Of a DNA stretch of 64,000 bases, positions 38,844 through 55,200 are shown one piece after another. Position 1 is the first letter of the stretch, and every line of letters starts with the position of its first letter. The notes under the pieces are model-generated. The model searched no databases. It was not told the origin of the DNA and worked only from the letters and a program-made list of their open reading frames with translations. This stretch comes from Botryllus schlosseri (taxonomy: Eukaryota): NCBI GenBank assembly GCA_051294905.1, contig CM119373.1:12152001-12216000 (forward strand), given 5' to 3'. Made by a program: the position numbers and the translations under genes.

Positions 38844-40013
38844 TCAATGACTAACAAAATTACCATACCGATCCGGCTGGCGCCTAACTCTAGTTGAACG
38901 CCGAAGCTCGACGTCTAGATTTCTACTCGACTCATCTGGTGCATCCTCTGAATGGTTAGATTCTTGAGGCTCTTCATCAGATGACTTCAACTCAACGTTA
39001 CAAACTTCGCGACTTGGCTCGTGGCCATCGATATCAACAGAACAAGGTTCAGCTTGTTTCGTTTCAGGATTAGTCGATGGTGTGTCTTCTCCAGTAGGAA
39101 AACGGGCCAAATCGTTGAGTGAGACGTTTGACTCGCGGCCGTTAGGAAAACGAACACGTGCGTAAGTCGGGTTGGCTTCAAGAAGTTCGACCTCAGAACA
39201 TAGTTCGTCGCCCTTGTTTCTGACGAATTTGCGTAAGAAAACTGGCCCCGGTGTCAATAGCCAGGATGGCACGCTATTCCCCACCATACTTTTTCTTGGA
39301 AAGGAAAAAAATCGGTCATGCGGTGTTGAATTAGTTGACGTGCAAAGTAGCGATCGAACTGAATGTAGCGCATGAGGAAGGGCGTCAGCCCAACATGATT
39401 CTGAGACTCCGGTTGATTTCAAAATGAGTTTGATAGTTCGCCATAATGTTTGATTAAGGCGTTCGCACTGCGAATTTCCTGTTGGGTGGTAAGGCGTAGT
39501 GAAGCTAGTTGCAACCCCGCGAGAATGTAAATAATCCTTGACTTCCTTGGACACGAAAGCGGTGCCTCGGTCACTGTGAACGTATCCCGGAAGTCCAAAA
39601 ACTGCGAATAGTGTCGACAAACACGAAACGACGGTTAGCGCGGAAGTGTTGCGACATGGAAAGGCGAACGGAAAACGACTATATTCGTCTATGACAACGA
39701 ACATGAAAGGGGATTTGTTAGATTTCAAAGGCCCTTTGAAGTCTACGTTGATTCTTTCCCAAGGTTTCGTTGCTTTCACAAGCACTTGCGGATTGCATTT
39801 GTAAAAATTTGGTTTGATCTGAGCACAAATGCGGCAACGAGCGCAAGTCTCACGGACGTCATTTAGGGAGAACGAGAGATTTTTCGAACGAACGAAATGA
39901 TGCAGCCTTGTGACTCCTGGATGACCCAGAGTGTCGTGTATGCGATTTAGATTAGAACCCAACTCACAGGGTGAAATCGATGCGCAATACGAAGATGTGG
40001 TCCGCGAAAACAT
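38844..40013 (-). CDS. Gypsy integrase portion of pol (continuation after a 1-nt frameshift)
   Basis: HHCC (HDTLGHPG..CARCRIC) and D-D-E (NVDFKG, HSDRG, QCERLN); no chromodomain. Confidence 0.93.
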   Translation of the reverse strand: MFSRTTSSYCASISPCELGSNLNRIHDTLGHPGVTRLHHFVRSKNLSFSLNDVRETCARCRICAQIKPNFYKCNPQVLVKATKPWERINVDFKGPLKSNKSPFMFVVIDEYSRFPFAFPCRNTSALTVVSCLSTLFAVFGLPGYVHSDRGTAFVSKEVKDYLHSRGVATSFTTPYHPTGNSQCERLNQTLWRTIKLILKSTGVSESCWADALPHALHSVRSLLCTSTNSTPHDRFFSFPRKSMVGNSVPSWLLTPGPVFLRKFVRNKGDELCSEVELLEANPTYARVRFPNGRESNVSLNDLARFPTGEDTPSTNPETKQAEPCSVDIDGHEPSREVCNVELKSSDEEPQESNHSEDAPDESSRNLDVELRRSTRVRRQPDRYGNFVSH

Positions 40014-40027
40014 ATCAGCCGCAACAT

Positions 40028-42511
40028 TCAGTGCCCCGGTTTGTGTACGATATCATACGAAAATTGACCAAGTTCGACACGCCACAGCTGGATTTTGGTA
40101 TTTTTGATTTTACCTTTAGATTTGCCGTCAAACATGAACGCGACAGATCTTTGGTCAGTAACAAGAGTGAAATGTCTGCCATGTAAAAAATGAGCCCATT
40201 TACGAACTGCCGCGATAATTGAGGACGCTTCTTTCTCAACAGAGGAGTATCGTATTTCACTTGGCGATAGTGCTTTTGACATGAACGCGACCGGTCGACC
40301 GTTTTGACTGAGGATAGCTGCAATGGCTGCATTGGAAGCATCACACTCTATTGTGAACGGACTTGTCTCGTCAATCCTACCAAGAGACGCGTCAACTAAC
40401 TCGCGTTTTAAATCGTTAAATGCGATAGATGCATTTTCGGAAAGCGGAAATTTTTCGACTGAATACAAAGGACGGATTTTGTCGGAAAAGTTGGGCAACC
40501 ATTTGGCATAGTAGGCAAACATACCACACACTCGTTTTAGTTCTGGGTTGTTGCGTGGCGGCAATAAATCGATTAACGGCTTCAGTCTTTCTGGGTCCGG
40601 TTTGATCACGCCATGCGACACGCGATAACCGAGCAAGTCTATTTCCGTAGAACGGATGATCGACTTCGAATGATTGAAAGTGAGGCTGAATCGCTGAGCG
40701 GCATTGAGAAACGCGTCGAGATTTCGATCGTGGTCGTCCTTATCCATACCGCAAACAGTAATATTATCGAGATAAGCGAATGTGCCGGTGAGCTTGTTGT
40801 CTTTTATGACGTTGTCTATTATTCTTTGAAATGCCGAAACTCCGTTGGTGACTCCAAATGGCAATCGACGGTATTGGTAAAGATTTCCAGCGGCTTCGAA
40901 TGCCGTATACGGACGATCATCAGGTGATAGTGCCACTTGATAATACGCGGACTTCAGATCTAACGTACTGAAAACTTTGAAACGGGCGATGCTGTTGACT
41001 TGGTCATCGATCCTTGGTAAAGGATAGGCGTCTAGTAAGGTATACCTGTTGACCGTCTGAGAGAAGTCGATGACCATGCGCTTCTTGTGTCGACCGTCAT
41101 TTACAACAAGAACCTGTGCTCGCCAAGGCGATGAGGACGGCTCAATGATTCCTTCCTTCTCGAGTTTCGCAACTTCCGCTTTAATGAAATGTAGATCGGC
41201 TACGCTATATCTTCTGGATTTAGTGGCAATCGGTTTACAATTTGGTGTCATAAACTTGAAAATTTGCGGTGCTTCGACACACGCTTGAGCAACTCCGCAT
41301 ACACTGTACTTCTGATCTCGAGGGAGTTCCAAGGTATCTTTATCTCCGTCCATATTGAAAATGACCCGTTTATGCAAGTTCATGAAATCGAGACCAAGCA
41401 CCACATCAGCGCATAAATCTTCCATCCCTTTAAGAGGGAATTCCGTATATTTCGTTTCGTTTACAAGAATGTCCGGTCTGTAGAGTTCTTCAATCTTGCG
41501 GGAATGGGATTTAGAAGCAAATGTAACCGTAGAGGAGTACGGAGTGGATTTCAGGTCAATTTCGTTGGCGTATCCAGTGCTTATGAAGCTTTCCGCGGAA
41601 CCGGAGTCGATTAAAGCAAATGTTATGTGGCAGCCGATCTTAACCACGATTCTTGCTTTTATGAGACATTTGGGTACTCCGATGGCGCTGAAGTATGAGA
41701 TCATTGCAGTTACTGTTTTCCTGTTGTCGGTGGCCTTTCTCATGCAAACCACTTCATAATGACCTAGGACTCCACAATAGCCACACTCGCTCCGTTTCGC
41801 TGGACATTTATATCGGGAGTGGAATGACTGACCGCAAAAAAAGCACTTCCGATCAGGTTTGATTGTTTTGCTCATTGCGTTGAGTTGACTGTGAGTTTCT
41901 GTGGATGATAGTTCGACTTCGGGATTCAAAGATTTTTCCAGCGGTTCGACGCCGACAGATGAACATGGAGTGCTGCAATAGATACTAGAGCTTCGCTGGG
42001 CGAATTCTAATGAGCGGGCTTTTGAGATCGCCATTTCGAGGGTTACAGCCCCGTCACTTTCTAATAATCTCTGTCTGATAACGTTTGATCGGAGACCAGT
42101 AACGAAAGCGTCGCGGATGGACTCCTTGCGATGATCTTCCGCCGAGATAGTCTTGAATGTGCAATCTTTCGCTAGATCTGCCAAGGCGCGGGAAAATTCC
42201 TCGATCGTCTCTTCGGGCTTCTGAATACGGGTTACTAGCATGTGGCGGACGAAGATTTCGTTCTTTTGCTTGATATAAATTTTGTCGAGAAGTTCTATTG
42301 CGGTATCGTAAGTCGAACTTTCTTCAAAATAGGAATAGACAGACGACGACACGAAATTTGTTAAGATCTTCAACTTGTCGATCTGTGTATCTTGATCAAA
42401 TGATGAAAGAAAATTATCGAAGGTCTTCTTCCAATGCTTATACTGTTTTTCAGCAGAGGCGGAGTCCGGACTGATATCGAGCTTGTCTGGTTTCAGAATC
42501 CTTTGTGCCAT
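40028..42511 (-). CDS. Gypsy gag-protease-RT-RNase H polyprotein
   Basis: Two Zn knuckles (CFFCGQSFH..C; CGYCGVLGH..VC), protease LIDSGS, RT LDLKSAYYQ..LPFG..YLDN, RNase H ECDAS..EKEA..TDQ. Confidence 0.96.
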   Translation of the reverse strand: MAQRILKPDKLDISPDSASAEKQYKHWKKTFDNFLSSFDQDTQIDKLKILTNFVSSSVYSYFEESSTYDTAIELLDKIYIKQKNEIFVRHMLVTRIQKPEETIEEFSRALADLAKDCTFKTISAEDHRKESIRDAFVTGLRSNVIRQRLLESDGAVTLEMAISKARSLEFAQRSSSIYCSTPCSSVGVEPLEKSLNPEVELSSTETHSQLNAMSKTIKPDRKCFFCGQSFHSRYKCPAKRSECGYCGVLGHYEVVCMRKATDNRKTVTAMISYFSAIGVPKCLIKARIVVKIGCHITFALIDSGSAESFISTGYANEIDLKSTPYSSTVTFASKSHSRKIEELYRPDILVNETKYTEFPLKGMEDLCADVVLGLDFMNLHKRVIFNMDGDKDTLELPRDQKYSVCGVAQACVEAPQIFKFMTPNCKPIATKSRRYSVADLHFIKAEVAKLEKEGIIEPSSSPWRAQVLVVNDGRHKKRMVIDFSQTVNRYTLLDAYPLPRIDDQVNSIARFKVFSTLDLKSAYYQVALSPDDRPYTAFEAAGNLYQYRRLPFGVTNGVSAFQRIIDNVIKDNKLTGTFAYLDNITVCGMDKDDHDRNLDAFLNAAQRFSLTFNHSKSIIRSTEIDLLGYRVSHGVIKPDPERLKPLIDLLPPRNNPELKRVCGMFAYYAKWLPNFSDKIRPLYSVEKFPLSENASIAFNDLKRELVDASLGRIDETSPFTIECDASNAAIAAILSQNGRPVAFMSKALSPSEIRYSSVEKEASSIIAAVRKWAHFLHGRHFTLVTDQRSVAFMFDGKSKGKIKNTKIQLWRVELGQFSYDIVHKPGH

Positions 42512-43602: not shown

Positions 43603-44796
43603 ATGGGGTATACATGTTGCATTCCTGAATGCAGCACTGGGTACAGGTCTAGTAGTAAAACTGGTGCGACTGCTACACTGCTCAAGTTTCCACGGGACGA
43701 AAAATCTAAGGAGAAATGGATCAGGGCGATACCGAGGCAGAACTGGACACTGTCGGTGAACCACAGGGTGAGGAAGCGTAATGCATTGTTCACGCCCCTG
43801 CAGCCATCAGGAGATCATCCGGGCCTTGCATACCTGAAAGAGGCAATAATCATCTTTAAAGAATGGCAAGCATCTGGAAATATTGGACTGACTCGAGAGA
43901 CATTTATGGCGTGTATCCAGACAATGGGTGCCATTATTGACCTCACGAGTTATTTGGTGAGCAAATATGGTATTGAATACATACTCTCAGGAAAAGTGAT
44001 GTTCGATCCGATAGAAGCAAGATTTGGGATGTACCGCCAGTCAAATGGTGGCAACTTCTTCATGTCAGTGAAACAGTTGCTTTCGGCAGAGAAAAAATTT
44101 CGATGCTTAAGTTTACTCCAACAACGAGGATTGTTCATCGCTTCACGTCTCGATCAGTCTGATCATGGAAATTATCATGAGGATGATGCACCCTCTTCAT
44201 CCCAGTTCTCGTGGTTAGTTGAATACTTGAGTAATGTTGCCATTGACGAGGTGGCTGATAGTGATGCGGCTGTTTCTTTCTATGTAAGTGGTTATATTGG
44301 ACGGTCCATTACCAGGCGAAGGCATTGTGGCAAATGCAGTAATTTACTTGTTAAGAGCATTTCTGTTCCGCCACTATCTGATTCTATACCAGACAAGTAC
44401 AAATCAGTGCTGCAAATTGCAAACAGGGGTGGTCTCTCAGAACCATCTGACTATTGTTATGTCTTGACAACCCTTGCTGTCCAATATTACACAGCTCTAG
44501 CCAACAACAGTGATGTTATGAAAAAGTTCATAACCTGTCCTAATCCAAGAAGGGTTTTTGTATCTGCCATTCGCGAAATTTTGAAGTCAACTTTTCTGTG
44601 CAATCTCATATCTGTTGTATGTGAGAATGAGAAAGATCCCCATAACAATTTTGAATTGATCATGCAAACGTCATTCAACTACTTTGCAAAAAAACAGTTG
44701 AAACGCTTCAACAGCAAGACTAGTTCCAAGCTGCCCATGAGCCAAAAACATCAAAAGATCAGGAAACTTAACTCCAAGGGTTCCAGCAAATCTTAG
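43603..44796 (+). CDS. Truncated THAP domain fused in frame to the C-terminal part of a P-element transposase (397 aa)
   Basis: MGYTCCIPEC..KFP..KW..AIPR (THAP N-terminal half) joined after NHRV to LTRETF..YILSGK..DPIEARFG.YRQSNGGN and Y.SGYI..C..C..L..RGGL (P/THAP9 C-terminus). Most of the catalytic core is absent. Confidence 0.85.
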   Translation: MGYTCCIPECSTGYRSSSKTGATATLLKFPRDEKSKEKWIRAIPRQNWTLSVNHRVRKRNALFTPLQPSGDHPGLAYLKEAIIIFKEWQASGNIGLTRETFMACIQTMGAIIDLTSYLVSKYGIEYILSGKVMFDPIEARFGMYRQSNGGNFFMSVKQLLSAEKKFRCLSLLQQRGLFIASRLDQSDHGNYHEDDAPSSSQFSWLVEYLSNVAIDEVADSDAAVSFYVSGYIGRSITRRRHCGKCSNLLVKSISVPPLSDSIPDKYKSVLQIANRGGLSEPSDYCYVLTTLAVQYYTALANNSDVMKKFITCPNPRRVFVSAIREILKSTFLCNLISVVCENEKDPHNNFELIMQTSFNYFAKKQLKRFNSKTSSKLPMSQKHQKIRKLNSKGSSKS

Positions 44797-45530
44797 TGAT
44801 TTCTGGCTGTATCTGCTTTGTATGTTATTACACCTGCTCTGTATCTTCCCTCGATAAAAATACCTTGGTGTTCAGCTAGTGATTTCTGGCTGTATCTGCT
44901 TTGTATGTTATTACACCTGCTCTGTATCTTCCCTCGATAAAAATACCTTGGTGTTCAGCTAGTGATTTCTTATTCTATCTGCTCTGTATCTTGCCTTGAT
45001 TAAGTTGGTGATGTTTGGTATCTGCTGTGTCTCTACTAACCTGGATTAAAATATGTTTGTCATCAGCTAGTGATTTTCGGTTGTATATCTGCTCTGTAGC
45101 TTGTCTCGTTAAAAATACGTTTGTTTCCAGCTAGTGATTTTTACTATATCTACTCTGTAGCTAGCCTTGATTAAAATACTGGAATCTGCTGTGTATCTAA
45201 CCTGTATTAAAATGTTTGTCATCAACAAGTGACTTTTAGTTGTATCTGCTATGTACCTTGCCTTGATTAAAATACACATGCTTTCCGTTACTGATATTTA
45301 GTACATTCGTTTTCAGCTCTGTATGAGATAACCATAATGTCTGCTAGGCAGTTTTGATTTTATCTGCTCTGTGTTTTTTGGTTATATTTGCTGTGCATCT
45401 TGCCTTGAATAAAATACCCACCTTGATTAAAATACACATGTTTTCAGTTACTTATATTTGGTACATTCGTTTTTAGCTCTGTATGAGATAACCAGAATGT
45501 CTGCTAGGCAGTTATTTGAGAACCAAGAAA
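44795..45530. repeat. 83-bp tandem repeat array in the 3' part of the P element
   Basis: Two exact 83-bp units (TAGTGATTTCTGGCTGTATCTGC...GTTCAGC) followed by progressively diverged units. Confidence 0.9.
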
Positions 45531-46523: not shown

Positions 46524-46853
46524 ATGTCTGCTACAGATTATTTTTGCAGAAAATTGTACATGGAGGCTACAATCGAAGGGGAACCGATCACGCCTTCAAA
46601 ATTAGCAATCAGAATCTTCATAGAATCTGTCGCACTGAAGACCTCTCATCATTCATTGATAGCCAAGCAAGCTAAATTTCTTGCACACATAATTCGAAAA
46701 CCTAATGACAGTGTCGTGAGGTCAATAACGTTTGAAGATGAAAAGAGAACGAAAAAACGAAGACCCTCTGCAACGCTGATGAACAATGTCCTCAATCGGA
46801 ACGACACCCACATCAGCACATTCTCTAAAGCAGCACTTCCACTAGAAATTTAA
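46524..46853 (+). mobile_element. Degenerate RTE-like LINE ORF2 C-terminal fragment
   Basis: KQAKFLAHIIRKPND.V..ITF...RRP.ATL.N resembles the RTE C-terminal 'RQLRF.GH..R..GRP..T..D' pattern. Confidence 0.5.
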
Positions 46854-47612
46854 TTTATAATTCAAATCTTTGATGCTCTCTTTTTCGATGGATACTTCCA
46901 TCACCTCGGTGATGGTGCTCTAAGTCTGAACGCAGACTGAGCTAGACCTATAGATATCATGCTTCGTTTTAGCTTGCAGTTCGCTGCTATCAGGCTGCGT
47001 TGTCCCTCAACCACATATTTCGAGCTAAAACACAAATGATGGAAAATGTGACTATATTTAGAGTAACAATTTATTCCGAATTATTGTAAATTCTTAGTCT
47101 AGTAATACAAAGTATATGCGAAAATTTCATAAGTCAGGTCTCTAGTGACGTCACACAAACATTCAAACTAATTACCGATCAATTCCAATCAACTGAAAAA
47201 TCTAGCTATTATCGCACGGAAACGTATATGGACGGAGCCTAAATCAAGTAATAACCTAAATCGTGGCGTAAATCTCCAAAGTATCGGATATGTGACGGTT
47301 GGGATCAACGTTACTGAATAACGTACATAAACGGATTTACTGAATAGGTTATATTTCAAAATCGAATCACGAATATGGTGGAATACTCATTGATCGCTGA
47401 TATATAGGCTAATATATCAGAATTGAGGGCGAAAAATCTCCGGACAGGATCCTACATCCTAATGAAGTCACTCAGATTAAAAAAATACGTGAGAAGTCTG
47501 TTCCACGGACAAGAATCTCAAATGTTGTAAAATTCCAGAAAATCCTTCGTTGTTCCGTTGTAAACTAACTATGAGACGTATAAGTTTGATGCTTTGCTTG
47601 GAGTTATAGTTA

Positions 47613-49283
47613 TCAAACCCATGTCTGAGTATTCCTCATTGTTATTGAAGTGGTGCGTCTTCGACCTTGCCATGCAAGATGATTTTCCTCTAACTCCTCT
47701 TTAATGGCATCGAACTCATTTGGATACTTCCATTTCAGAAAGGAAAATAGCGTATATTCATGTTCTCCGGTAAAGACTTTCAAATCTGTCAGCCGTTGGT
47801 CTCTGATCAAAAATTTACCAGCCACGAACATCACATCGCGCCAGTAAAGTTCCCGACTGATGAATGCGTAGTATAAAATAGAGCGACCACTTGAATCAAG
47901 GATACTTTGTAAGTTGAGTATTGAGTTGGGAAATTGGACAATCCGTTTTGTTGGAACGACGCCTTGATTCAAGTCTGAATTCTCAAGGAAATCAACTAGC
48001 GTTTTCCAATTACGTTTTGCTTTTAATTGTTTCACAAATACATCTGCATGGTCATAGTTTAAAGAGTAATCCGTTGATTTGAACACACTTCGGTAGTCAT
48101 CCGAGGAAAATTTCTTGTATAACTCTTCTTTTTGCTTAATATCAGTGACCAACGCGCTAATGACAGTGCCCGTTCTTCCAAACATATGACGCCACATTTC
48201 GATTACCTGGAAATCTTTACGCCCCAACGCCTCACTAACTTTACTTTGAAGCTTCTTCTTATAGCCATCCGAATATAAGTTATTTAGAACACGTTCAATG
48301 AACTGGTGTTCACGAGGACGCGCACTCTTGAGGAATGAAAGCAAAATAATCGTTACTTTATTTTGATTTGCTGGCTCCATTTTTAACGACGCAACAATCA
48401 CCTTTACTACACCATAAATCAATGTAGCCAATTGCACAACAAATGACAAGTGATGCGTTACTAGAACTGCTGAGAGCGAGTAAGAATATGATGTTGGCGT
48501 TGCTTCACATCTATAATATTCGAGTCGCGTACCATTTCCGTCGACTACCGTCAAGTTACAATCGAAAAAGGATAATGGCGGCCAAATGGTCGGTATCAGG
48601 TGTAATCGAAGAGCCAACACAAGATGGATTAATATAACAATACCCCGGTAAGTACAGCACATAACATAGGAGACAAGTAGGTCCGTCGTCGGTAAGCTCA
48701 AGGTCAATTTTAAACATGCTTCGCGCACGTTGCTCTGGGGTTCAGAGCAATTTGTATCCAAAATATTCATAACAAACACGTCGTGGTGTAGCTCACTTTC
48801 CTCATACGCAGTGTACAGCGTCTCGGTTGCACTATCAAACGCTGATGCAGCATTCTTGAGAGACTTCATTCTTGTCCATGATACCCAAGTAACAAACTCG
48901 ATGATTGCGCAGATGAGAAGCATCGAAATCTTATCGAATATAATAGCGGTCGTGTTCAAACATTGATTTGTCACGTGTTCCAAATAGTCATCAGTATGAT
49001 CTGCTTCTCTATCGGAGCTGCAAGTCAGATCGTGTTTCATGCTTTCTAATCGCCAGAAAATCAAGGCGCAAACAGAGTTAACAACGAGCGAGACCACTCT
49101 TACTTTTTCCCAGGTAGGCCGGAGCCGTGATTGGCTCAAAAGATTACTATATATGATGTCATCTGCGCCGAAAGGTGGCATCGCCTTCGTAAAATTTGGA
49201 TACACTTGCTGATTAAGGCAGAAATATATCACTATAGCATAGTCTGTGTACGACATGGGAATAGAATGTAGACATGATAGCAT
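47613..49283 (-). CDS. LRRC8/pannexin-like large-pore channel protein with a non-LRR C-terminus (single coding exon; likely start ATG 49181, MPPFG...)
   Basis: Open 556 codons. Four hydrophobic segments; two Cys in each extracellular loop (DLTC..NQC; FDC..YRC); SRLRPTWEKV resembles LRRC8 RILKPWWDVF; a post-TM4 NQNKVTIILLSFL segment; no LxxLxLxxN repeats. A possible acceptor (TTTCTGCCTTAATCAG) lies just upstream of ATG 49181. Confidence 0.8.
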   Translation of the reverse strand: MLSCLHSIPMSYTDYAIVIYFCLNQQVYPNFTKAMPPFGADDIIYSNLLSQSRLRPTWEKVRVVSLVVNSVCALIFWRLESMKHDLTCSSDREADHTDDYLEHVTNQCLNTTAIIFDKISMLLICAIIEFVTWVSWTRMKSLKNAASAFDSATETLYTAYEESELHHDVFVMNILDTNCSEPQSNVREACLKLTLSLPTTDLLVSYVMCCTYRGIVILIHLVLALRLHLIPTIWPPLSFFDCNLTVVDGNGTRLEYYRCEATPTSYSYSLSAVLVTHHLSFVVQLATLIYGVVKVIVASLKMEPANQNKVTIILLSFLKSARPREHQFIERVLNNLYSDGYKKKLQSKVSEALGRKDFQVIEMWRHMFGRTGTVISALVTDIKQKEELYKKFSSDDYRSVFKSTDYSLNYDHADVFVKQLKAKRNWKTLVDFLENSDLNQGVVPTKRIVQFPNSILNLQSILDSSGRSILYYAFISRELYWRDVMFVAGKFLIRDQRLTDLKVFTGEHEYTLFSFLKWKYPNEFDAIKEELEENHLAWQGRRRTTSITMRNTQTWV

Positions 49284-49362
49284 GGGCCTTAGATGCTATA
49301 CATTCAAAATAAGAGCATGAATTATTACAAACGACAGTAAGCTACGTCCGTTTCATGTAACA

Positions 49363-50085
49363 CAGGGCTGGCCAACCTTTTCGGCCAAAGGGCCACATTC
49401 GATTGACGAACTTTTGCGCGAGCCACTATCCGCGCGAAGCGCGAAAATTTTTGAAGTTCATAGGTCAATAATATTGTCACTTGACTATATTGCGGGCCTG
49501 CTGTATATCGCTGGGCTAAGTTTGCGAGGACTGGGCTATTCGGCGCATGGACATATCGATATTGAAAGCTGTGACCAACATGCGTCAATCATTTCGTGCT
49601 TAGGTTTCACGGTGAACGGTCTTACTGCGAGCGCAAACGCAATGTCGCATATGTTGAACCACACTCTGTCTCGTAATCGCGAATACAGTTACACTCAATC
49701 TGATACATTAGGTGTTCTTCCATTTTCACAAAAAGGCAACAATATTAAAAACAAGAAATCGAGTGACAACATATTGCGCTAAGCTTGTAGAAAATTTTTA
49801 CCTTTGATAAATCTATCGCAAATTATTCTGCTTTATTGTAGTGCACGAAGATGTACCAATATGTGAATGGCTGATGAATCTGTCAATGCGTCGGAACTGA
49901 TATTTTAGTCATCACATCTTAAGTATTGCGGCCAGACTAATCAAATTTTTGGTTGGCCTTGCAAGCTCAAAATCTGTGCAATCCATTTTTGATGATATTA
50001 GAAATTTCGGAAATTACCTCGCGGGCCACTCAAAACCTTCTCGCGGGCCACATGTGGCCCGCGGGCCACTGGTTGGCCGGCCCTG
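49363..50085. mobile_element. hAT-type MITE immediately upstream of the channel ORF
   Basis: TIR CAGGGCTGGCCAACC/GGTTGGCCGGCCCTG; perfect TSD ATGTAACA (49355-49362, 50086-50093). Confidence 0.9.
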
Positions 50086-50207
50086 ATGTAACAGGTAAAA
50101 TCAATATGGAATACATGTTTGTCACTCGAATGTTCTCGAACTCTCAAACACTCGAATGTTATTGTTGAGTGTCCCAAAACATATATCAATTGCATAATAA
50201 TTAGGCG

Positions 50208-50602
50208 TAGGGTTGCATTTGAAACAAAAATCTATTTAAAACAAACATGTTTAAAACAAAGCCCTTGTTTCAAACATGTTTCTTATTTTTTTATTTATTA
50301 AAGCCTTGACGTCACGAATACTAAATTGTGACGTCATAGTGGTTTGATATTGACAATTGAAAATATAGGGTATATATTGCTCCTTTGACGAAATATCTAT
50401 GCACTATGTCTATAGCTGTTGAACCGACTATTTTGAGCGTTCCAACCATCCCATATCGTATATGTCGGCTATATCGGGTGGTAATCGTCCGTAGGCTCAT
50501 ACAACATGTTTTTTTTTTTAAGTATTTAGACAATTATGGCATAATTATACAACTTGAAAAAATAAAAATTTTAAACAACCATTTGTTTTAAATGCAACCC
50601 TA
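50208..50602. mobile_element. MITE family H, second copy
   Basis: TAGGGTTGCATTT/AAATGCAACCCTA ends; interior colinear with 13974-14369. Confidence 0.8.
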
Positions 50603-51249
50603 GTTAAGGGATTTGCACATTATCATGGTTATGCAAAAATTGTCAGTACCAAATTACCTATAAATTTTCTGGTTCAATTGTAGGTCATTTTTTGCTTTCT
50701 TACATTGCTCATGTGAGACGTGAATCAGAATTGGGTTTCAGGTATTACATGAAACCTGTTTTAAACATTTCAGGTGTTAATCATGCCCAGCACACTGTAG
50801 CCTAGTACTCAAACCGAGTCTGTGGAATCATTTGTAGCTATAGGTATTTCAACTAACGTCCTCCAAAGTTGCTCTGACTTTGATCAAAGATCATCATTCT
50901 GAAAGTAAACCCCGTGCGCGCAGAATAGCTTGTAGATTAAGTATAGTCAGCATGAGTCTGTAAGTAATTGGTTCACACCGGGCTATTCTTACGGTGACGT
51001 TTTATTTTGACCGGTATTTAGCTATATGATCTGTACTAACACGATGTAACGACAGTGAAAATTATAACGAAAACTTCAATATAACTGCGGCTACGATGGT
51101 CCAGAAACGTGCAAAATTTCTTACTGACCAAAATTCGAAAACTGATTTTCTTGAATCGCAAGTTAAATACTGACGTATCGTGAGTCGTGACATTAGTAAC
51201 ATTATATCTGTCTCGGGGGTTTATCAGCGTGAATGATTGAGTCATGCTC

Positions 51250-54200
51250 TACTTAACCTCATCGGACGGGAGAAAGCGACAAGGCCACTTTTTAGTCTTT
51301 TCAGTGATCTATGTCGTACAGTTAGCAAAGCGCATCGCCTACAACAGCACAGCAGGAAACCCAGCCGACCGAAACCAAACCAGCTGAAAATCCAGCTCAA
51401 ACCGACACTATCGTTAAAGAAAATAAACAGAGAACAGGATAGACCATCATGAAATCACCGAAGCCGACACGCAACAACAACGCAACTAAAAGGTATCTCG
51501 AAAAGCACGAGTATGACGAAATAAAATCGCCGACCAGAAAAGCTGTAAACCTGTCAACCGAACCGATGATAACAAACACAGTTCCGAAATCGTACCTTAA
51601 ATAATAACGATGGATCGACTGTCAAAAATTACGGTAAACGTTATAACATACTAAATAGCAACACGAAAAGAACTCTAGTTTTTGACTACCTTAAGAAATC
51701 CAATGCGGATATATGCTTTCTACAAGAAACACATACCACACTGGAAACATAATCCATATTGCAAAACGAATGGAATGGCACGTCTTTTTGGAACTCATAC
51801 GACAAAACTCTGCAGGTACAGCTATATTGATTACCGCGAAAAGACGTGACATAAGAATAAAGGGATCTCATAAGGATCCAGAAGGTAGAATTATCAACGC
51901 TGACACTAAAATAGGGAACGTTAACCTACAGCTAACGAACATATACGCACACACTGACGGCGCAAAGAAAAGACCCCAATTTTATAGAATGGCCAAAAGC
52001 ACCTTTAAAGCAGCTAACAAGATTGTCGCTGGCGACTTCAACTCTGTTGAACAACCACAGTTGGACAGGGTCAATACGGTCCCGTTCAAAGATAAGAAAG
52101 ATACAGAGGCCTTGAAAGAAAGTCTGAAAATAACTGGTGTGGAAGATGCCTTTCGAACCCTGTATCCAACTAAAAAGGAATATACGTACAAGTACGGCGG
52201 TGGTGAATCACGACTTGACCGAATATATGTGTCTGAATCTATTGCTATAAAATCATGCGAGCACAGATCGTGCCCGTACTCTGACCACGATGCGGTTCTC
52301 TTGAAAGCAACTATACAAAAACGGGAAATTGGAGAAAAGATTTGGAATAACAATACAATGATCTATGAAGAGGAATCCTTTCATGATGGATTTGCATCAA
52401 AATGGAACAAATGGCAAACTCTTCACCCCATTTTATACCGTACGAAAACAGAGTGGTGGATAGCTATCAAAGACAAAATTAATACTTTAGAAATCAAACA
52501 GGCAAATAGATTAGGAAAAGAAAAGGCGACGAAACTTGATACAGAAATGAAAAATATTGACGAAATGCGAAAACAGATCGACGAAGGGAAAGACCTCGTG
52601 GAGGAATATCGTCGTGTTAAAAAGAAAATTTGGAACTTGGAAGCGGATAGCCTTCAAAAATTACAAATCCAAGCCAACATCGAAAACGAAAATAGCCTGG
52701 ACAAGATTCCGTCAATGCTCTTTGACAAAATTAGAGAAAGAAGAGAGCCCGCATATATAGACGAACTTGTGGATACTAATACATCTGATCACGCCGCGAA
52801 ACAAACAATAGCAGCAAACTTCTACCGAAACCTGTTCAACAAAAGATCGATCGATAAGCAATGCTCTGAGGACTTCCTCGCCAACATCAATGGAGCTTTA
52901 TCAGATAATCAGGTTAGTGAACTTGATTCGGAAATTACCATGACAGAGGTTCGAACGGCCGTTTTCAGCCAGCATAACTGTGTCGTACGCCTGGCGCAGA
53001 CGGGATTAGTGCTGAATTTTAGCAATCGAGCTGGGATATAATCAAACACGACCTGGTGGATATATTTAACGAACTTTATGGTGCAAATGAGATCAATCGA
53101 GAAATTCTCGAAGGCGTCGTTAAAGTAATTCACAAATCTGGGGATGGATCTGATTTGAAAAATTATCGGCCAATCACATTATTGAATGTGGATTATATAA
53201 TCTTAAGTAAAATCATCACTCGCCGTATCCAAAATTTCCTTCCTGAAATCTCCCATGGACGCCAATATGTCAAACCGCCGAACAAAAGAACAGATTTGAA
53301 TGTCATGCTCAGAGAAATTGCCGAAAATATGAAAGAGAGAAAGGAAGGAAGGCGCAATAGTATCGGTTGACTTCAAGAAAGCGTACGATTCATTATCGCA
53401 TGATTTCATGTTAAGTGTTTTAACGAAAATGGGATTTGGTGTGAAAGCCCTGGCCTACATAGAAAACGTATACAAAAACAGCACGGCGAAAATATTTATT
53501 AATGGCCGAATCGGAGACACGGTAGAGATTGGCAGGGGAATCAAGCAAGGTGATCCCATTTCCATGTTATTATTCACGTTAACTACAGAACCTCTTCTCC
53601 AGATGTTAAATAAGAAAGTCCCTGGCTATAAACTGCCTGGAATGAGGAAATGAATTCTAACGCCAGCCTATGCCGACGATATCACGCTGACAATACCACG
53701 CAGAGCAGACGCGGAGTCGTGTATTGCTATAATTAGGAAATTCACGCTGGCAAGCAACTTGGACATGAACGAATTAAAGACAAAAGGAATACAATTCGGA
53801 ACAGACAGACGGCAGAGCACTATTCTCCACGTTGAAATGGGTTGACAAAATAAACGTCATGGGAGTATCGATAAGGAAAGCGAGAAACATACAGCAATGG
53901 CGAAAGATCTACGAAGACGCGGCAAAAATATGCAGCAAAATGAGAGATCTGAAATTAAGAATCGACGAAAAGGTAATTGTGTTCCGAACAAAAATATTCC
54001 CTAAATTTTTGTATCTAGGTATGATCCGATGCCACGCGAGACAAGAAGTAAACCGAAGAAACAAATCATGACGACGCTTTTCGATAACTACGCCACAGTT
54101 GAATATGACACGATCATCAAGAACAAGATCGCATGCGGTCTTGGTCTCTTAGACATCCCAACTAAGCTCGACCTCCAGTTCATAAAACCGGCGATCAAGT

Positions 54201-55200
54201 TCTTGAAAAAATCAGAGAGCGACTACAACGAATGGACAAGAAGGGTAGACCAACAAATTGCAATAACCTTTTCAAAGTTTTTGAATTACAGACTGAACAA
54301 CGCGAGACCGCACGCCTTCGAACCGCTGCAACATTGGAAATCGATGCTGCAAGTCATAGAAAATTACCAAATAACGAATGAAGAAATACAAAAAGAAAGT
54401 ATAAGAGAAATTTACAAGAAGATAATCGCTCGCAGAAGAAGCCAAGATCCAGTACCCGTTTGGGTTAATTGGAAGAATGTAAACAGCAATACGCTAAGAC
54501 CCGTAGAACGAAACTTCAATTGGGAAGTTGGGCACAACACCCTGTACACAAAACACAGGATGTACGAAAGACTTGGTGCGCACAGCACAGAGTGTGAATT
54601 CTACAATACGGGCATTGAAAACATCAGACACCTCTTTGTCAGATGCCAAGTCACCAAAGCAATTATATCCCGACCACTGCAAGCATGGGATAAAGCGGCA
54701 AATGAATCTGCAACGCAGCCTTCAGAAAAGCTAATCGTTGGTCTGAATCAGCCTGGCAGCCAGAAAGAAGATGCACTGCTTCAAATAATTACAATCTTCA
54801 AGCAAGCGGTATGGAGAATGCGAAACAGACGCGTGTACGAATCAGTCCAGCCGAGTGTCCTCTGGTTGAAAAAGTCCATCAGTCTACGAATACAGAACAA
54901 AATCAATCAACAGAGAGATATACTCGGGCCGATCACAACAGAAACACTGGCGCAAATAAAACGAGATATTCGAGAACGAACCTAACTACTACTACACTCC
55001 GATGACAACTCGACGACAGCAGCAATAACATCGTACTAAAATTTAACGCATTTATTCTGATATATTTTTAGTTTTGAACCGTAATTTTCATGAAATTCTA
55101 ACAAACGAAAGATGATTTTCGCATCGCCTTCCGTCGAACATCGCATTAATGTAATATCTTTCGTTACAGTAATTACCCGCGTATTTTTCAACGATACGTT
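51250..55200 (+). mobile_element. Degenerate L1-clade (Tx1-like) non-LTR retrotransposon
   Basis: ORF1-like tail to ~51600, ORF2 from 51610 to 54985, then an AT-rich 3' region. Ends are approximate. Confidence 0.85.
51610..54985 (+). pseudogene. L1/Tx1 ORF2 (APE endonuclease-RT-Zn finger), multiply frameshifted
   Basis: FDYLKKSNADICFLQETH, VAGDFNSV, SRLDRIYV, SDHDAV (APE); KNYRPITLLNVDY, DFKKAYDS, GIKQGDPIS, AYADD (RT); C..ENIRHLFVRC (zf-RVT); spread over at least six frame segments. Confidence 0.92.

What the first reader, a model, noticed from the sequence alone, without database searches (positions are those of the whole stretch)
47613..49283. LRRC8/pannexin-like channel whose cytosolic LRR domain is replaced by an unknown ~240-aa domain
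Seen: an intact single-exon ORF among decayed neighbours, with 4-TM topology, paired loop cysteines and an N-terminal RLRPTWEKV. After TM4 comes a helical, charged tail with no LRR motif but one ankyrin-like segment (DSSGRSILYYA). Established: LRRC8 is a pannexin-like pore plus LRRs (VRAC, also conducts cGAMP); pannexins and innexins lack the LRRs. Inference: a large-pore channel with an alternative regulatory or sensor domain, potentially an undescribed subfamily.
Basis: partly seen in the sequence, partly recalled or inferred. Interest (0 to 1): 0.75.

Follow-up and report, generated by a model that had tools for sequence, protein, structure and literature searches.

The report
LRR-less LRRC8-type pore protein gene
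This is an intact, transcribed, intron-free gene for a very divergent member of a large family (over 50 loci in this probable sea-squirt genome) that joins the membrane pore domain of vertebrate LRRC8 volume-regulated anion channels to a family-specific helical tail instead of leucine-rich repeats, which bears on how LRRC8 channels arose.

Summary

After residue ~320, where LRRC8 starts its LRRs, comes a ~200-aa helical domain shared across the family. It has no LRR, Ank, Pfam or PDB match. No LRR array lies in or near any of 62 family loci.

Two probable-RNA assemblies hold unspliced contigs covering the ORF and a ~0.5-kb 3' UTR that ends at an AATAAA. A second allele keeps the frame.

Channel activity and oligomerisation are inferred, not shown. 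Constraint on this copy looks relaxed (pN/pS ~0.67, long branch).

The scan has flagged the same family before on other DNA of this genome (s1-249653).

The parts
47613..49283 (-). Full ATG-to-stop ORF as listed (556 codons plus stop at 47613-47615).
   Evidence: It is far longer than any stop-free frame in shuffled windows (maximum 210 codons).
47616..49181 (-). Probable coding sequence from Met35 (522 aa). All residue numbers in this report count from this Met.
   Evidence: Every paralogue starts about 20 residues before the L-x-P-x-W-E-K motif. Both RNA contigs include this ATG but stop before the first ATG.
49098..49142 (-). N-terminal family motif, residues 14-28 (LLSQSRLRPTWEKVR). It aligns with the LKPWWD segment of LRRC8 that precedes TM1.
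   Evidence: P22 and E25 are invariant; L15, W24 and R28 are at least 90% conserved. HMM alignment to LRRC8D.
48369..49181 (-). LRRC8-type pore domain, residues 1-271: TM1 23-47, EL1 48-78, TM2 79-103, IL1 104-167, TM3 168-199, EL2 200-230, TM4 231-267.
   Evidence: AF2 model with pLDDT 82.3. Leave-one-out pore profile E 2.1e-22 over residues 3-269. Foldseek and VIA-align to LRRC8.
48948..49040 (-). Extracellular loop 1, residues 48-78. It holds C54, C74, the sequon N76, and helix 64-77, which starts with D64-D65 at the position aligned to the LRRC8A R103 / LRRC8D Phe pore constriction.
   Evidence: The role of R103 is from PMC6363415. The mapping to the target is my inference from the alignments.
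48492..48584 (-). Extracellular loop 2, residues 200-230: a beta hairpin (206-214, 217-227) with C208, C225 and sequons N209 and N216.
   Evidence: The two Cys align with the two EL2 Cys of LRRC8D.
48225..48368 (-). Post-TM4 linker helices, residues 272-319. They correspond to the LRRC8 IL2 helices that precede the LRR domain.
   Evidence: VIA-align: model 12-319 on LRRC8A 15-410. The profile alignment reaches LRRC8A residue 402.
47616..48224 (-). Family-specific cytosolic tail, residues 320-522: about 12 short helices, a small hairpin (468-477) and a long C-terminal helix (490-517). It matches no known family.
   Evidence: Tail profile built without the target: E 1.1e-29 over residues 273-489. 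No PDB hit at E<=10. No Pfam family in 30 members. No Atlas hit.
47865..47897 (-). DSSGRSILYYA, residues 429-439, the best-conserved tail motif ((R)SILYYAF in the family).
   Evidence: L436 and Y438 kept. The ankyrin-like reading is untested beyond Pfam, which was negative, and a weak lead.
47071..47612 (-). 3' untranslated region, covered colinearly by the RNA contigs.
   Evidence: X13 contig covers 47104-49245 and X4 contig covers 47071-49052, with no joints.
47070..47075 (-). AATAAA polyadenylation signal, at the point where both RNA contigs end.
   Evidence: Sequence read; contig ends.

Best explanation
The ORF is a real, transcribed, intron-free gene. It encodes a ~522-aa membrane protein of a lineage-expanded family, found here in what is probably an ascidian genome.

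Architecture. Residues 1-319 form an LRRC8-type pore domain: an N-terminal pore-lining segment, four TM helices, two disulfide-type extracellular loops and the intracellular linker helices. At the junction where vertebrate LRRC8 begins its leucine-rich repeats, a family-specific ~200-aa all-helical cytosolic domain follows.

Shown: homology and fold of the pore domain, with LRRC8 closer than pannexin or innexin; absence of LRRs; homology of the tail across the family; transcription; and an open frame in two alleles.

Inferred: like LRRC8, pannexins and innexins, the protein assembles into a six- or seven-subunit ring, perhaps with paralogues. It would form a large-pore channel whose gating is controlled by the cytosolic tail in place of the LRR domain. 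The position that carries the anion-selecting Arg103 in LRRC8A is Asp64 (with Asp65) here, so the pore need not be anion-selective.

This copy is the most divergent one found, and it evolves under weak constraint.
For: ORF and chance.

Family: at least 80 matches and at least 50 loci in the own genome. 16 of 35 members hit PF12534 on their own.

The target belongs to the family. Profiles built from 30 paralogues, without the target or its nearest relatives, give pore E 2.1e-22 and tail E 1.1e-29, and none of 2000 shuffles scores. The target keeps 23 of the 30 columns that are at least 80% conserved, including all four loop Cys.

Link to LRRC8. The family profile against PDB gives LRRC8D 1.6e-19, LRRC8A 8e-18 and LRRC8C 2.6e-17 over profile positions 20-315, corresponding to LRRC8A residues 20-402. 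Pannexin-3 reaches only 0.16.

No LRR.

Expression. X13 has a 2143-nt contig and X4 a 1982-nt contig over the ORF plus 3' UTR, with zero depth in the flanks and no joints. Raw RNA-seq reads carry the X13 allele. AATAAA lies at the contig ends.

Selection. The frame is open in the second allele. The terminal branch is about 2 changes per column without a stop. The reciprocal-best relative P0001 is not encoded in this genome.

Topology. Sequons N76, N209 and N216 fall in the predicted extracellular loops.
Against: The target alone matches no Pfam family or PDB chain, so the link to LRRC8 runs through the family profile and an alignment-dependent model.

Constraint on this copy looks relaxed. pN/pS is 0.67 from 12 nonsynonymous and 5 synonymous differences, too few to distinguish from 1. 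It has the longest branch in the tree (2.07). It has lost 7 conserved columns, including a 97%-conserved Arg (R175C).

The gene sits alone among transposable elements, and several family loci are pseudogenes with stops. Coverage in raw RNA-seq is low and the strand was not resolved. The two assemblies are only guessed to be RNA.

Oligomerisation could not be tested (no verdict). No conductance or localisation data exist.
Confidence: 0.6

Rival explanations
1. The copy is a dying gene: a recently released paralogue drifting towards pseudogene status. It would still be transcribed, with its frame open only because too little time has passed.
For: pN/pS is about 0.67. It has the longest terminal branch, 2.07. 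It has lost 7 of 30 conserved columns, including R175. It lies isolated among transposable elements, far from the family's tandem clusters. The family contains many copies with stops. RNA-seq depth is low.
Against: A branch of about 2 changes per column with no stop in 522-556 codons is not expected under long neutrality; shuffled sequence gives at most 210 codons. Both alleles are open, and polymorphism density in the ORF (17 in 1633 nt) is about half that of the 3' UTR (10 in 509 nt). All four loop Cys and the N-terminal motif are kept. A reciprocal-best relative exists in another sample.
Confidence: 0.2
2. The protein is functional but is not a conducting channel. The LRRC8-type fold would serve as a membrane scaffold or receptor, with the expanded, fast-evolving tails acting as interaction modules.
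For: The large, rapidly diverging, tandemly arrayed family resembles recognition or immune gene families. The constriction residue and a conserved Arg differ from the family or from LRRC8A. Nothing here tests conduction.
Against: The pore-forming elements are retained: the N-terminal segment, TM1, TM2, the EL1 helix and the IL1 helices. Every characterised family with this fold (LRRC8, pannexin, innexin) forms large-pore channels; this is established knowledge, see PMC6363415.
Confidence: 0.12
3. This rival concerns the tail only and is compatible with the main reading. The 'unknown' tail would be a strongly diverged ankyrin-repeat domain rather than a new fold.
For: The conserved (R)SILYYAF...G...FAAAK.L segment and the W..LV..L.N..L segment resemble ANK helix 1 and helix 2 consensus. 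That is my reading against recalled consensus. For paralogue L021's tail, the language-model features' nearest named clusters are ankyrin-repeat proteins at 0.91-0.92. The model shows short paired helices and a hairpin.
Against: None of 30 tails hits any Ank family in Pfam at E<=1. The tail profile finds no PDB chain at E<=10, although ANK proteins are abundant there. The Atlas lead has low shared-feature counts (111-145) and low recognition (1506). The target's own tail gave no Atlas hit.
Confidence: 0.3
4. The ORF is carried by, or derived from, a transposable element or virus, which would explain its multi-copy, intronless state and its TE-rich setting.
For: Its neighbours are a Gypsy-type pol, a THAP ORF and LINE fragments. 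A highly repeated, highly transcribed element abuts the 5' side at 49266-50761. The family has more than 50 copies.
Against: The copies are 13-30% identical, so they are ancient paralogues and not a recent burst. No terminal inverted or long direct repeats flank the ORF. The homologues are cellular channel proteins.
Confidence: 0.02

Closest known systems
LRRC8A-E (vertebrate volume-regulated anion channel, VRAC, subunits; Pfam PF12534 Pannexin_like plus LRR)
   Different: There is no leucine-rich repeat domain. A ~200-aa helical domain of unknown family follows the linker. Asp64 sits at the position of the LRRC8A Arg103 constriction. The IL1 and EL1 loops are much shorter. The family has more than 50 fast-evolving copies in one genome, against five conserved paralogues in vertebrates. 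The target itself falls below Pfam's threshold.
Pannexins (PANX1-3) and innexins (Pfam PF00876)
   Same: They share the 4-TM large-pore fold with paired loop cysteines and a helical cytosolic region, and they lack LRRs.
LRR-less 'LRRC8 pannexin-like TM region domain-containing proteins' in UniProt/AlphaFold DB (for example A0A7D9HTE8, A0A0C2NBR2, A0A6P8J671), named by automatic annotation
   Same: They carry the same pore-domain fold without LRRs, and are 339-619 aa long. One aligns over the query's full length.
   Different: Identity is only 10-12%. The organisms were not shown by the tool. The full-length alignment has an rmsd above 20 A, so a shared tail fold is not shown. I found no literature describing them.

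Membership tests
LRRC8 (VRAC subunits) | Pannexin-like four-TM pore domain (PF12534) | tested here: met
LRRC8 (VRAC subunits) | C-terminal cytosolic domain of about 15-17 leucine-rich repeats | tested here: not met
   There is no LRR Pfam hit in the target or in 30 family tails. No LRR motif occurs in the long paralogues. No LRR arrays occur in six frames of 62 family loci or in the 34-kb neighbourhood. The transcript ends without further exons.
LRRC8 (VRAC subunits) | Two conserved cysteines in each extracellular loop (EL1-EL2 disulfides) | tested here: met
   C54, C74, C208 and C225 are present. Each column is 97% conserved, and they align with the LRRC8D loop Cys. Disulfide formation itself was not tested.
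LRRC8 (VRAC subunits) | Basic residue at the extracellular constriction (Arg103 of the obligatory LRRC8A subunit), which confers anion preference | tested here: not met
   By alignment the position is Asp64, at the N-terminus of the modelled EL1 helix 64-77. The role of R103 is from PMC6363415. The position also varies among LRRC8B-E, so this argues against an LRRC8A-like subunit, not against the fold.
LRRC8 (VRAC subunits) | Hexameric (or heptameric) ring assembly | tested here: inconclusive
   The trimer prediction of residues 1-320 gave no verdict. The tool folded without the alignment, at pLDDT about 52.
LRRC8 (VRAC subunits) | Swelling- or low-ionic-strength-activated anion and osmolyte conductance | not testable with these tools
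   This needs electrophysiology.
Pannexin/innexin (PF00876) | Sequence-profile match to the Innexin family | tested here: not met
   No PF00876 hit in the target or in 35 family members. Pannexin-3 scores only E 0.16 against the family profile.
Pannexin/innexin (PF00876) | Four-TM large-pore fold | tested here: met
Ankyrin-repeat domain (tail only) | Profile match to Ank, Ank_2 or other members of that clan | tested here: not met
   None of 30 tails matches at E<=1. The tail profile finds no PDB chain at E<=10. There is only a weak language-model lead from paralogue L021. A fold-level test was not possible.

The most novel reading that the evidence does not exclude
The family is a previously undescribed branch of large-pore channels in the sister group of vertebrates. 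It would pair an LRRC8-type pore with a new cytosolic gating or sensor domain, and would represent either the pre-LRR ancestor of VRAC or an independent fusion at the same junction. Its more than 50 fast-evolving, tandemly arrayed copies would form combinatorial heteromers with diversified permeation (for example the acidic constriction in this copy) and diversified regulation, perhaps in immunity or self/non-self signalling.
Probability: 0.2. Interest if true: 0.8.

Novelty: new variant of a known kind. Interest (0 to 1): 0.55.

Why it matters
The published view is that LRRC8 arose near the chordate origin, when a pannexin-like pore combined with an LRR domain. On that view Lrrc8 genes are absent from invertebrates, and the LRR domain may have brought volume sensitivity (PMC6363415).

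Here a probable tunicate genome holds dozens of genes whose pore domain is clearly of the LRRC8 type rather than the pannexin type, right up to the LRR junction, but which continue into a different, uncharacterised helical domain. That provides natural 'LRR-swap' versions of the VRAC pore. They could be used to ask what the LRR domain contributes to gating. They could also show whether the LRRC8-type pore predates the LRR fusion, and what an alternative cytosolic domain senses.

The particular copy in this window is the most divergent and least constrained member, so better-conserved paralogues would be the first choice for experiments. Examples are those at C3:23.5-24.05 Mb, and the MKPWWE-type genes on C7, C15, C2 and C12.

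Tried and rejected
- Single-sequence AlphaFold gave pLDDT 38 and was unusable. It was replaced by the alignment-based model.
- The search for homologous proteins was blank three times: with the target, with alignment A1 and with paralogue L018. Proteins known to be in the collection (P0001-P0004) were not returned for A1 either, so I treat these blanks as uninformative.
- Complex prediction with three copies of residues 1-320 gave no verdict. The alignment was not used and pLDDT was about 52. This is not evidence for or against assembly.
- An ankyrin versus TPR profile-profile test of the tail could not be run.
- The six-frame search of the own genome with PF00876 Innexin found nothing, and nothing rang in the controls either, so it is uninformative.
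- I dismissed three weak hits as chance: JmjC_2 (E 0.011-0.019, below cut-off), an ARMC4 PDB chain (E 0.98) and 7tm_1 in one paralogue (E 0.009).
- Rfam found nothing in the window.
- I rejected a TE-borne origin: no flanking terminal repeats and anciently diverged copies.
- I first guessed amphioxus from genome size and chromosome-scale pieces. I dropped that guess after earlier notes pointed to a sea squirt and a GH6 domain, a tunicate hallmark by established knowledge, was found on C9. The species itself remains unknown to me.
- The strand of transcription could not be settled from the sparse raw reads.
- The 5' end is unresolved, because the RNA contigs break where a high-copy repeat begins.
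Full report
**1. The observation**

A 556-codon ATG-to-stop ORF lies at 47613-49283 on the minus strand. In 30 composition-preserving shuffles of the window the longest stop-free frame was 210 codons (mean 151), so the frame is not a chance product.

Its long-ORF neighbours are transposable-element genes:
- a Gypsy-type protease/RT/RNase H ORF and an integrase ORF at 38844-42511 (minus strand);
- a THAP-domain ORF at 43603-44796;
- LINE pieces at 51713-53041 and 54029-54985.

Hydropathy shows four hydrophobic segments in the first ~290 residues, followed by a soluble tail. The tail is charged: 28% D/E/K/R, pI 9.6.

**2. What the target matches on its own**

The target alone matches nothing above threshold:
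- no Pfam family above threshold;
- no PDB chain;
- no hit in the word-indexed protein search.

An exhaustive HMMER scan of 1.84 billion cluster representatives found only four relatives: P0001 at 1.8e-28 and 29% identity, then P0002, P0003 and P0004. All four are unnamed singletons from Logan assemblies, and the two I looked up (P0001, P0002) come from one run.

**3. A large family in the same genome**

Searching the window's own assembly (495.5 Mb, 219 contigs) with the protein found 12 divergent paralogues at 20-28% identity. Each is a single long open frame.

A profile of the family then found 80 matches, representing at least 50 loci. Most lie in tandem clusters on contig C3, at 12.45-12.9, 18.1, 23.5-24.05, 26.3-26.7, 29.7-29.9 and 35.03 Mb. 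Others lie on C2, C4, C6, C7, C12, C13, C14 and C15. Many are intact (450-1064 aa) and several carry stops.

All members start about 20 residues before a shared motif, L-x-P-x-W-E-K-x-R. This places the target's probable start at Met35 (49181), giving 522 aa. Residue numbers below count from that Met.

The target belongs to this family. Profiles built from 30 own-genome paralogues, leaving out the target and its four nearest relatives, recover its pore half at E 2.1e-22 (residues 3-269) and its tail at E 1.1e-29 (residues 273-489). None of 2000 shuffled decoys scored.

The target keeps 23 of the 30 columns that are at least 80% conserved, including the N-terminal motif and all four loop cysteines. 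It has lost seven: Y30V, T46E, G49K, P56S, N71T, V108L and R175C.

**4. What the family is**

Sixteen of 35 members hit Pfam PF12534, 'Pannexin-like TM region of LRRC8', on their own. No member hits Innexin, Ank or LRR families.

The family profile matches the pore domains of LRRC8D, LRRC8A and LRRC8C in the PDB at E 1.6e-19 to 1e-13. The match runs over profile positions 20-315, corresponding to LRRC8A residues 20-402. That covers everything from the N-terminal segment to the linker helices just before the LRRs. Pannexin-3 reaches only E 0.16.

The printed alignment shows three shared features:
- the LKPWWD segment;
- the first EL1 Cys and the N-x-x-C...W...Y stretch of the EL1 helix;
- both EL2 Cys.

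An AlphaFold2 model of the target, built with the 35-sequence family alignment, reached mean pLDDT 82.3 and pTM 0.75. The fold searches on this model agree:

| Search | Result |
|---|---|
| Foldseek, PDB | Top 50 hits are all LRRC8A/C/D or pannexin-1 pore domains; TM 0.52-0.68 by target |
| ESM Atlas, by shape | LRRC8C-like clusters, TM by query 0.47-0.48; innexin cluster 0.43 |
| AFDB Swiss-Prot | Only LRRC8, pannexin and innexin entries |

The sequons N76, N209 and N216 fall in the two predicted extracellular loops, as the LRRC8 topology requires.

**5. The tail**

From about residue 320, the model shows roughly a dozen short helices, a small hairpin (468-477) and a long C-terminal helix.

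The tail is homologous across the family.

No search links it to a known family:
- the tail profile finds no PDB chain even at E<=10;
- none of 30 tails hits any Pfam family at E<=1;
- the target's tail has no Atlas neighbour.

There are no LRRs:
- no LRR motif in ten long paralogues;
- no LRR array in any frame of 62 family loci, 273 kb including flanks;
- around the target, only chance-level loose matches, 5 against 5.0 expected.

One lead remains. For the tail of paralogue L021, the language-model features' nearest named clusters are ankyrin-repeat proteins (0.91-0.92). The shared-feature counts and recognition value are low, so this is not evidence.

**6. Expression and constraint**

In two assemblies whose size suggests transcriptomes, the flanks of the gene have zero depth. 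In each, a long contig is colinear with the genome over the ORF and about 0.5 kb downstream:
- X13: 2143 nt covering 47104-49245, depth 52;
- X4: 1982 nt covering 47071-49052, plus 187 nt reaching 49219.

No joint falls inside or after the ORF. A raw bulk RNA-seq run (X24, about 6% sampled) shows sparse reads across the ORF that carry the same variants as the X13 contig. An AATAAA sits at 47075-47070, where the contigs end.

Two things stay open. The strand could not be resolved. The 5' end is also unresolved, because a high-copy, highly transcribed repeat begins at about 49266.

The X13 allele differs at 17 ORF positions, 12 nonsynonymous and 5 synonymous, with no gap and no stop. That gives pN/pS of about 0.67. 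Polymorphism density in the ORF is about half that of the 3' UTR, where there are 10 differences in 509 nt.

In the family tree the target pairs with P0001 (support 98/95). Both are on very long branches (2.07 and 1.84 changes per column), so the pairing may be a long-branch artefact.

P0001's best match in this genome is the target (32% identity), and no identical copy exists here. P0001 therefore comes from DNA that this assembly does not encode, most likely another species.

An open frame over such a long branch argues for coding selection during most of its history. The current level of constraint looks weak.

**7. Mechanism (inferred)**

All characterised proteins with this fold (LRRC8, pannexins, innexins) form ring-shaped large-pore channels. 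In LRRC8 the pore is lined by the N-terminus, TM1, TM2, the EL1 helix and the IL1 helices, and the cytosolic LRR domain is thought to regulate gating (PMC6363415).

The target keeps all of these pore elements. I therefore read it as a subunit of an oligomeric large-pore channel, homomeric or mixed with paralogues, whose helical tail takes the regulatory place of the LRR domain.

In LRRC8A a ring of Arg103 at the N-terminus of the EL1 helix forms the constriction and favours anions. LRRC8C and LRRC8E have Leu there and LRRC8D has Phe. In the profile alignment that Phe lies ten residues before the second EL1 Cys. The same offset in the target is Asp64, followed by Asp65, exactly where the modelled EL1 helix begins. 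An acidic ring would predict a pore that is not anion-selective. This mapping is an inference from alignments. The attempt to test self-assembly gave no verdict.

**8. Comparison with the known, and novelty**

The protein shares the pore domain of LRRC8 but fails that family's defining LRR domain, so it is not an LRRC8 proper. It also fails the Innexin profile. It is best described as an LRR-less member of the PF12534 pore-domain group.

Such LRR-less proteins already exist in UniProt/AFDB under automatic names such as 'LRRC8 pannexin-like TM region domain-containing protein', at 339-619 aa. The bare architecture is therefore not unknown to databases.

The literature I could search does not describe them:
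- Searches combining LRRC8 with amphioxus, Ciona, tunicate or cnidaria found nothing relevant.
- The founding paper (Abascal and Zardoya 2012) is not held in the library, so I could not check what it says about tunicate homologues.

**9. The host**

Earlier follow-up notes of this scan call this genome a sea squirt. As a partial check I found GH6 domains at two loci on C9. By established knowledge, GH6 occurs among animals only in the tunicate cellulose synthase. I do not know the species.

Another first-stage note (s1-249653) flagged the same kind of protein 14.09 Mb further along this contig. That is my locus L054, an 897-aa ORF without LRR motifs.

**10. Verdict**

The gene is a divergent, weakly constrained but transcribed member of a large, undescribed, lineage-expanded family: an LRRC8-type pore joined to a non-LRR helical tail. 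The family is the interesting object, as a new variant of a known kind. Better-conserved paralogues would suit functional work better than this copy.

Noticed in passing
window 49266-50761: The stretch directly upstream of the gene reaches very high summed depth (about 400-2500) in the probable-RNA assemblies. It is covered only by many short, diverged pieces with loose ends, so it looks like a high-copy, highly transcribed dispersed repeat. It may supply or disturb the gene's promoter, and it is why the 5' end could not be mapped.
   Followed up: partly
window 38844-42511 (minus strand): Two adjacent long ORFs of a Gypsy-type LTR retroelement lie here: 827 aa with protease, RT and RNase H, and 389 aa with integrase. 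The gap between them is about 15 nt, so the element looks young. I only described it.
   Followed up: no
window 43603-44796 (plus strand): A 397-aa ORF has an N-terminal THAP domain (E 1.2e-6). It may be a domesticated or transposon-derived gene.
   Followed up: no
window 44794-45513: A degenerate tandem array of about 83-nt units, including two perfect 83-nt copies at 44794-44959, lies just after the THAP ORF.
   Followed up: no
window 46741-46772: In both raw RNA-seq runs many reads match only this ~32-nt piece and continue into unlike sequence on both sides (17-36 reads per side). The piece carries a fixed difference at 46758. It looks like a short segment shared with an expressed locus elsewhere.
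   Followed up: no
window 47224: Twelve X24 reads break here and continue downstream-of-gene into unrelated sequence with perfect agreement, and six molecules begin at 47274. This may be an alternative 3' UTR structure, a splice, or an allelic insertion.
   Followed up: no
window 51713-53041 and 54029-54985 (plus strand): Two ORFs, of 442 aa (endonuclease/exonuclease/phosphatase domain) and 318 aa (zf-RVT), look like fragments of a LINE-type element whose RT part is not in a long open frame.
   Followed up: no
G000 C3:24034862-24036655 (+) and C3:24045672-24047465 (-) (L036, L037): Two family members with the same frame length (618 aa) and the same N-terminal 30 residues lie in opposite orientation about 10 kb apart. 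This is a recent inverted duplication within the main cluster.
   Followed up: no
G000 C7, C15, C2, C12, C3:18.1 Mb (L021, L022, L052, L053, L056, L058): A separate clade of longer family members (690-770 aa) carries the exact LRRC8-like K-P-W-W-E motif and a longer tail with an extra C-terminal module (W..IVALLNT.IV...). These look like the most LRRC8-like and best-conserved genes of the family.
   Followed up: partly
G000 C9:15025585-15025875 and C9:15068570-15068854: Two GH6 (Glyco_hydro_6) domain matches above the Pfam cut-off lie inside ORFs of 531-545 aa. They are consistent with tunicate cellulose-synthase genes, and I used them only as a check on the host lineage.
   Followed up: partly
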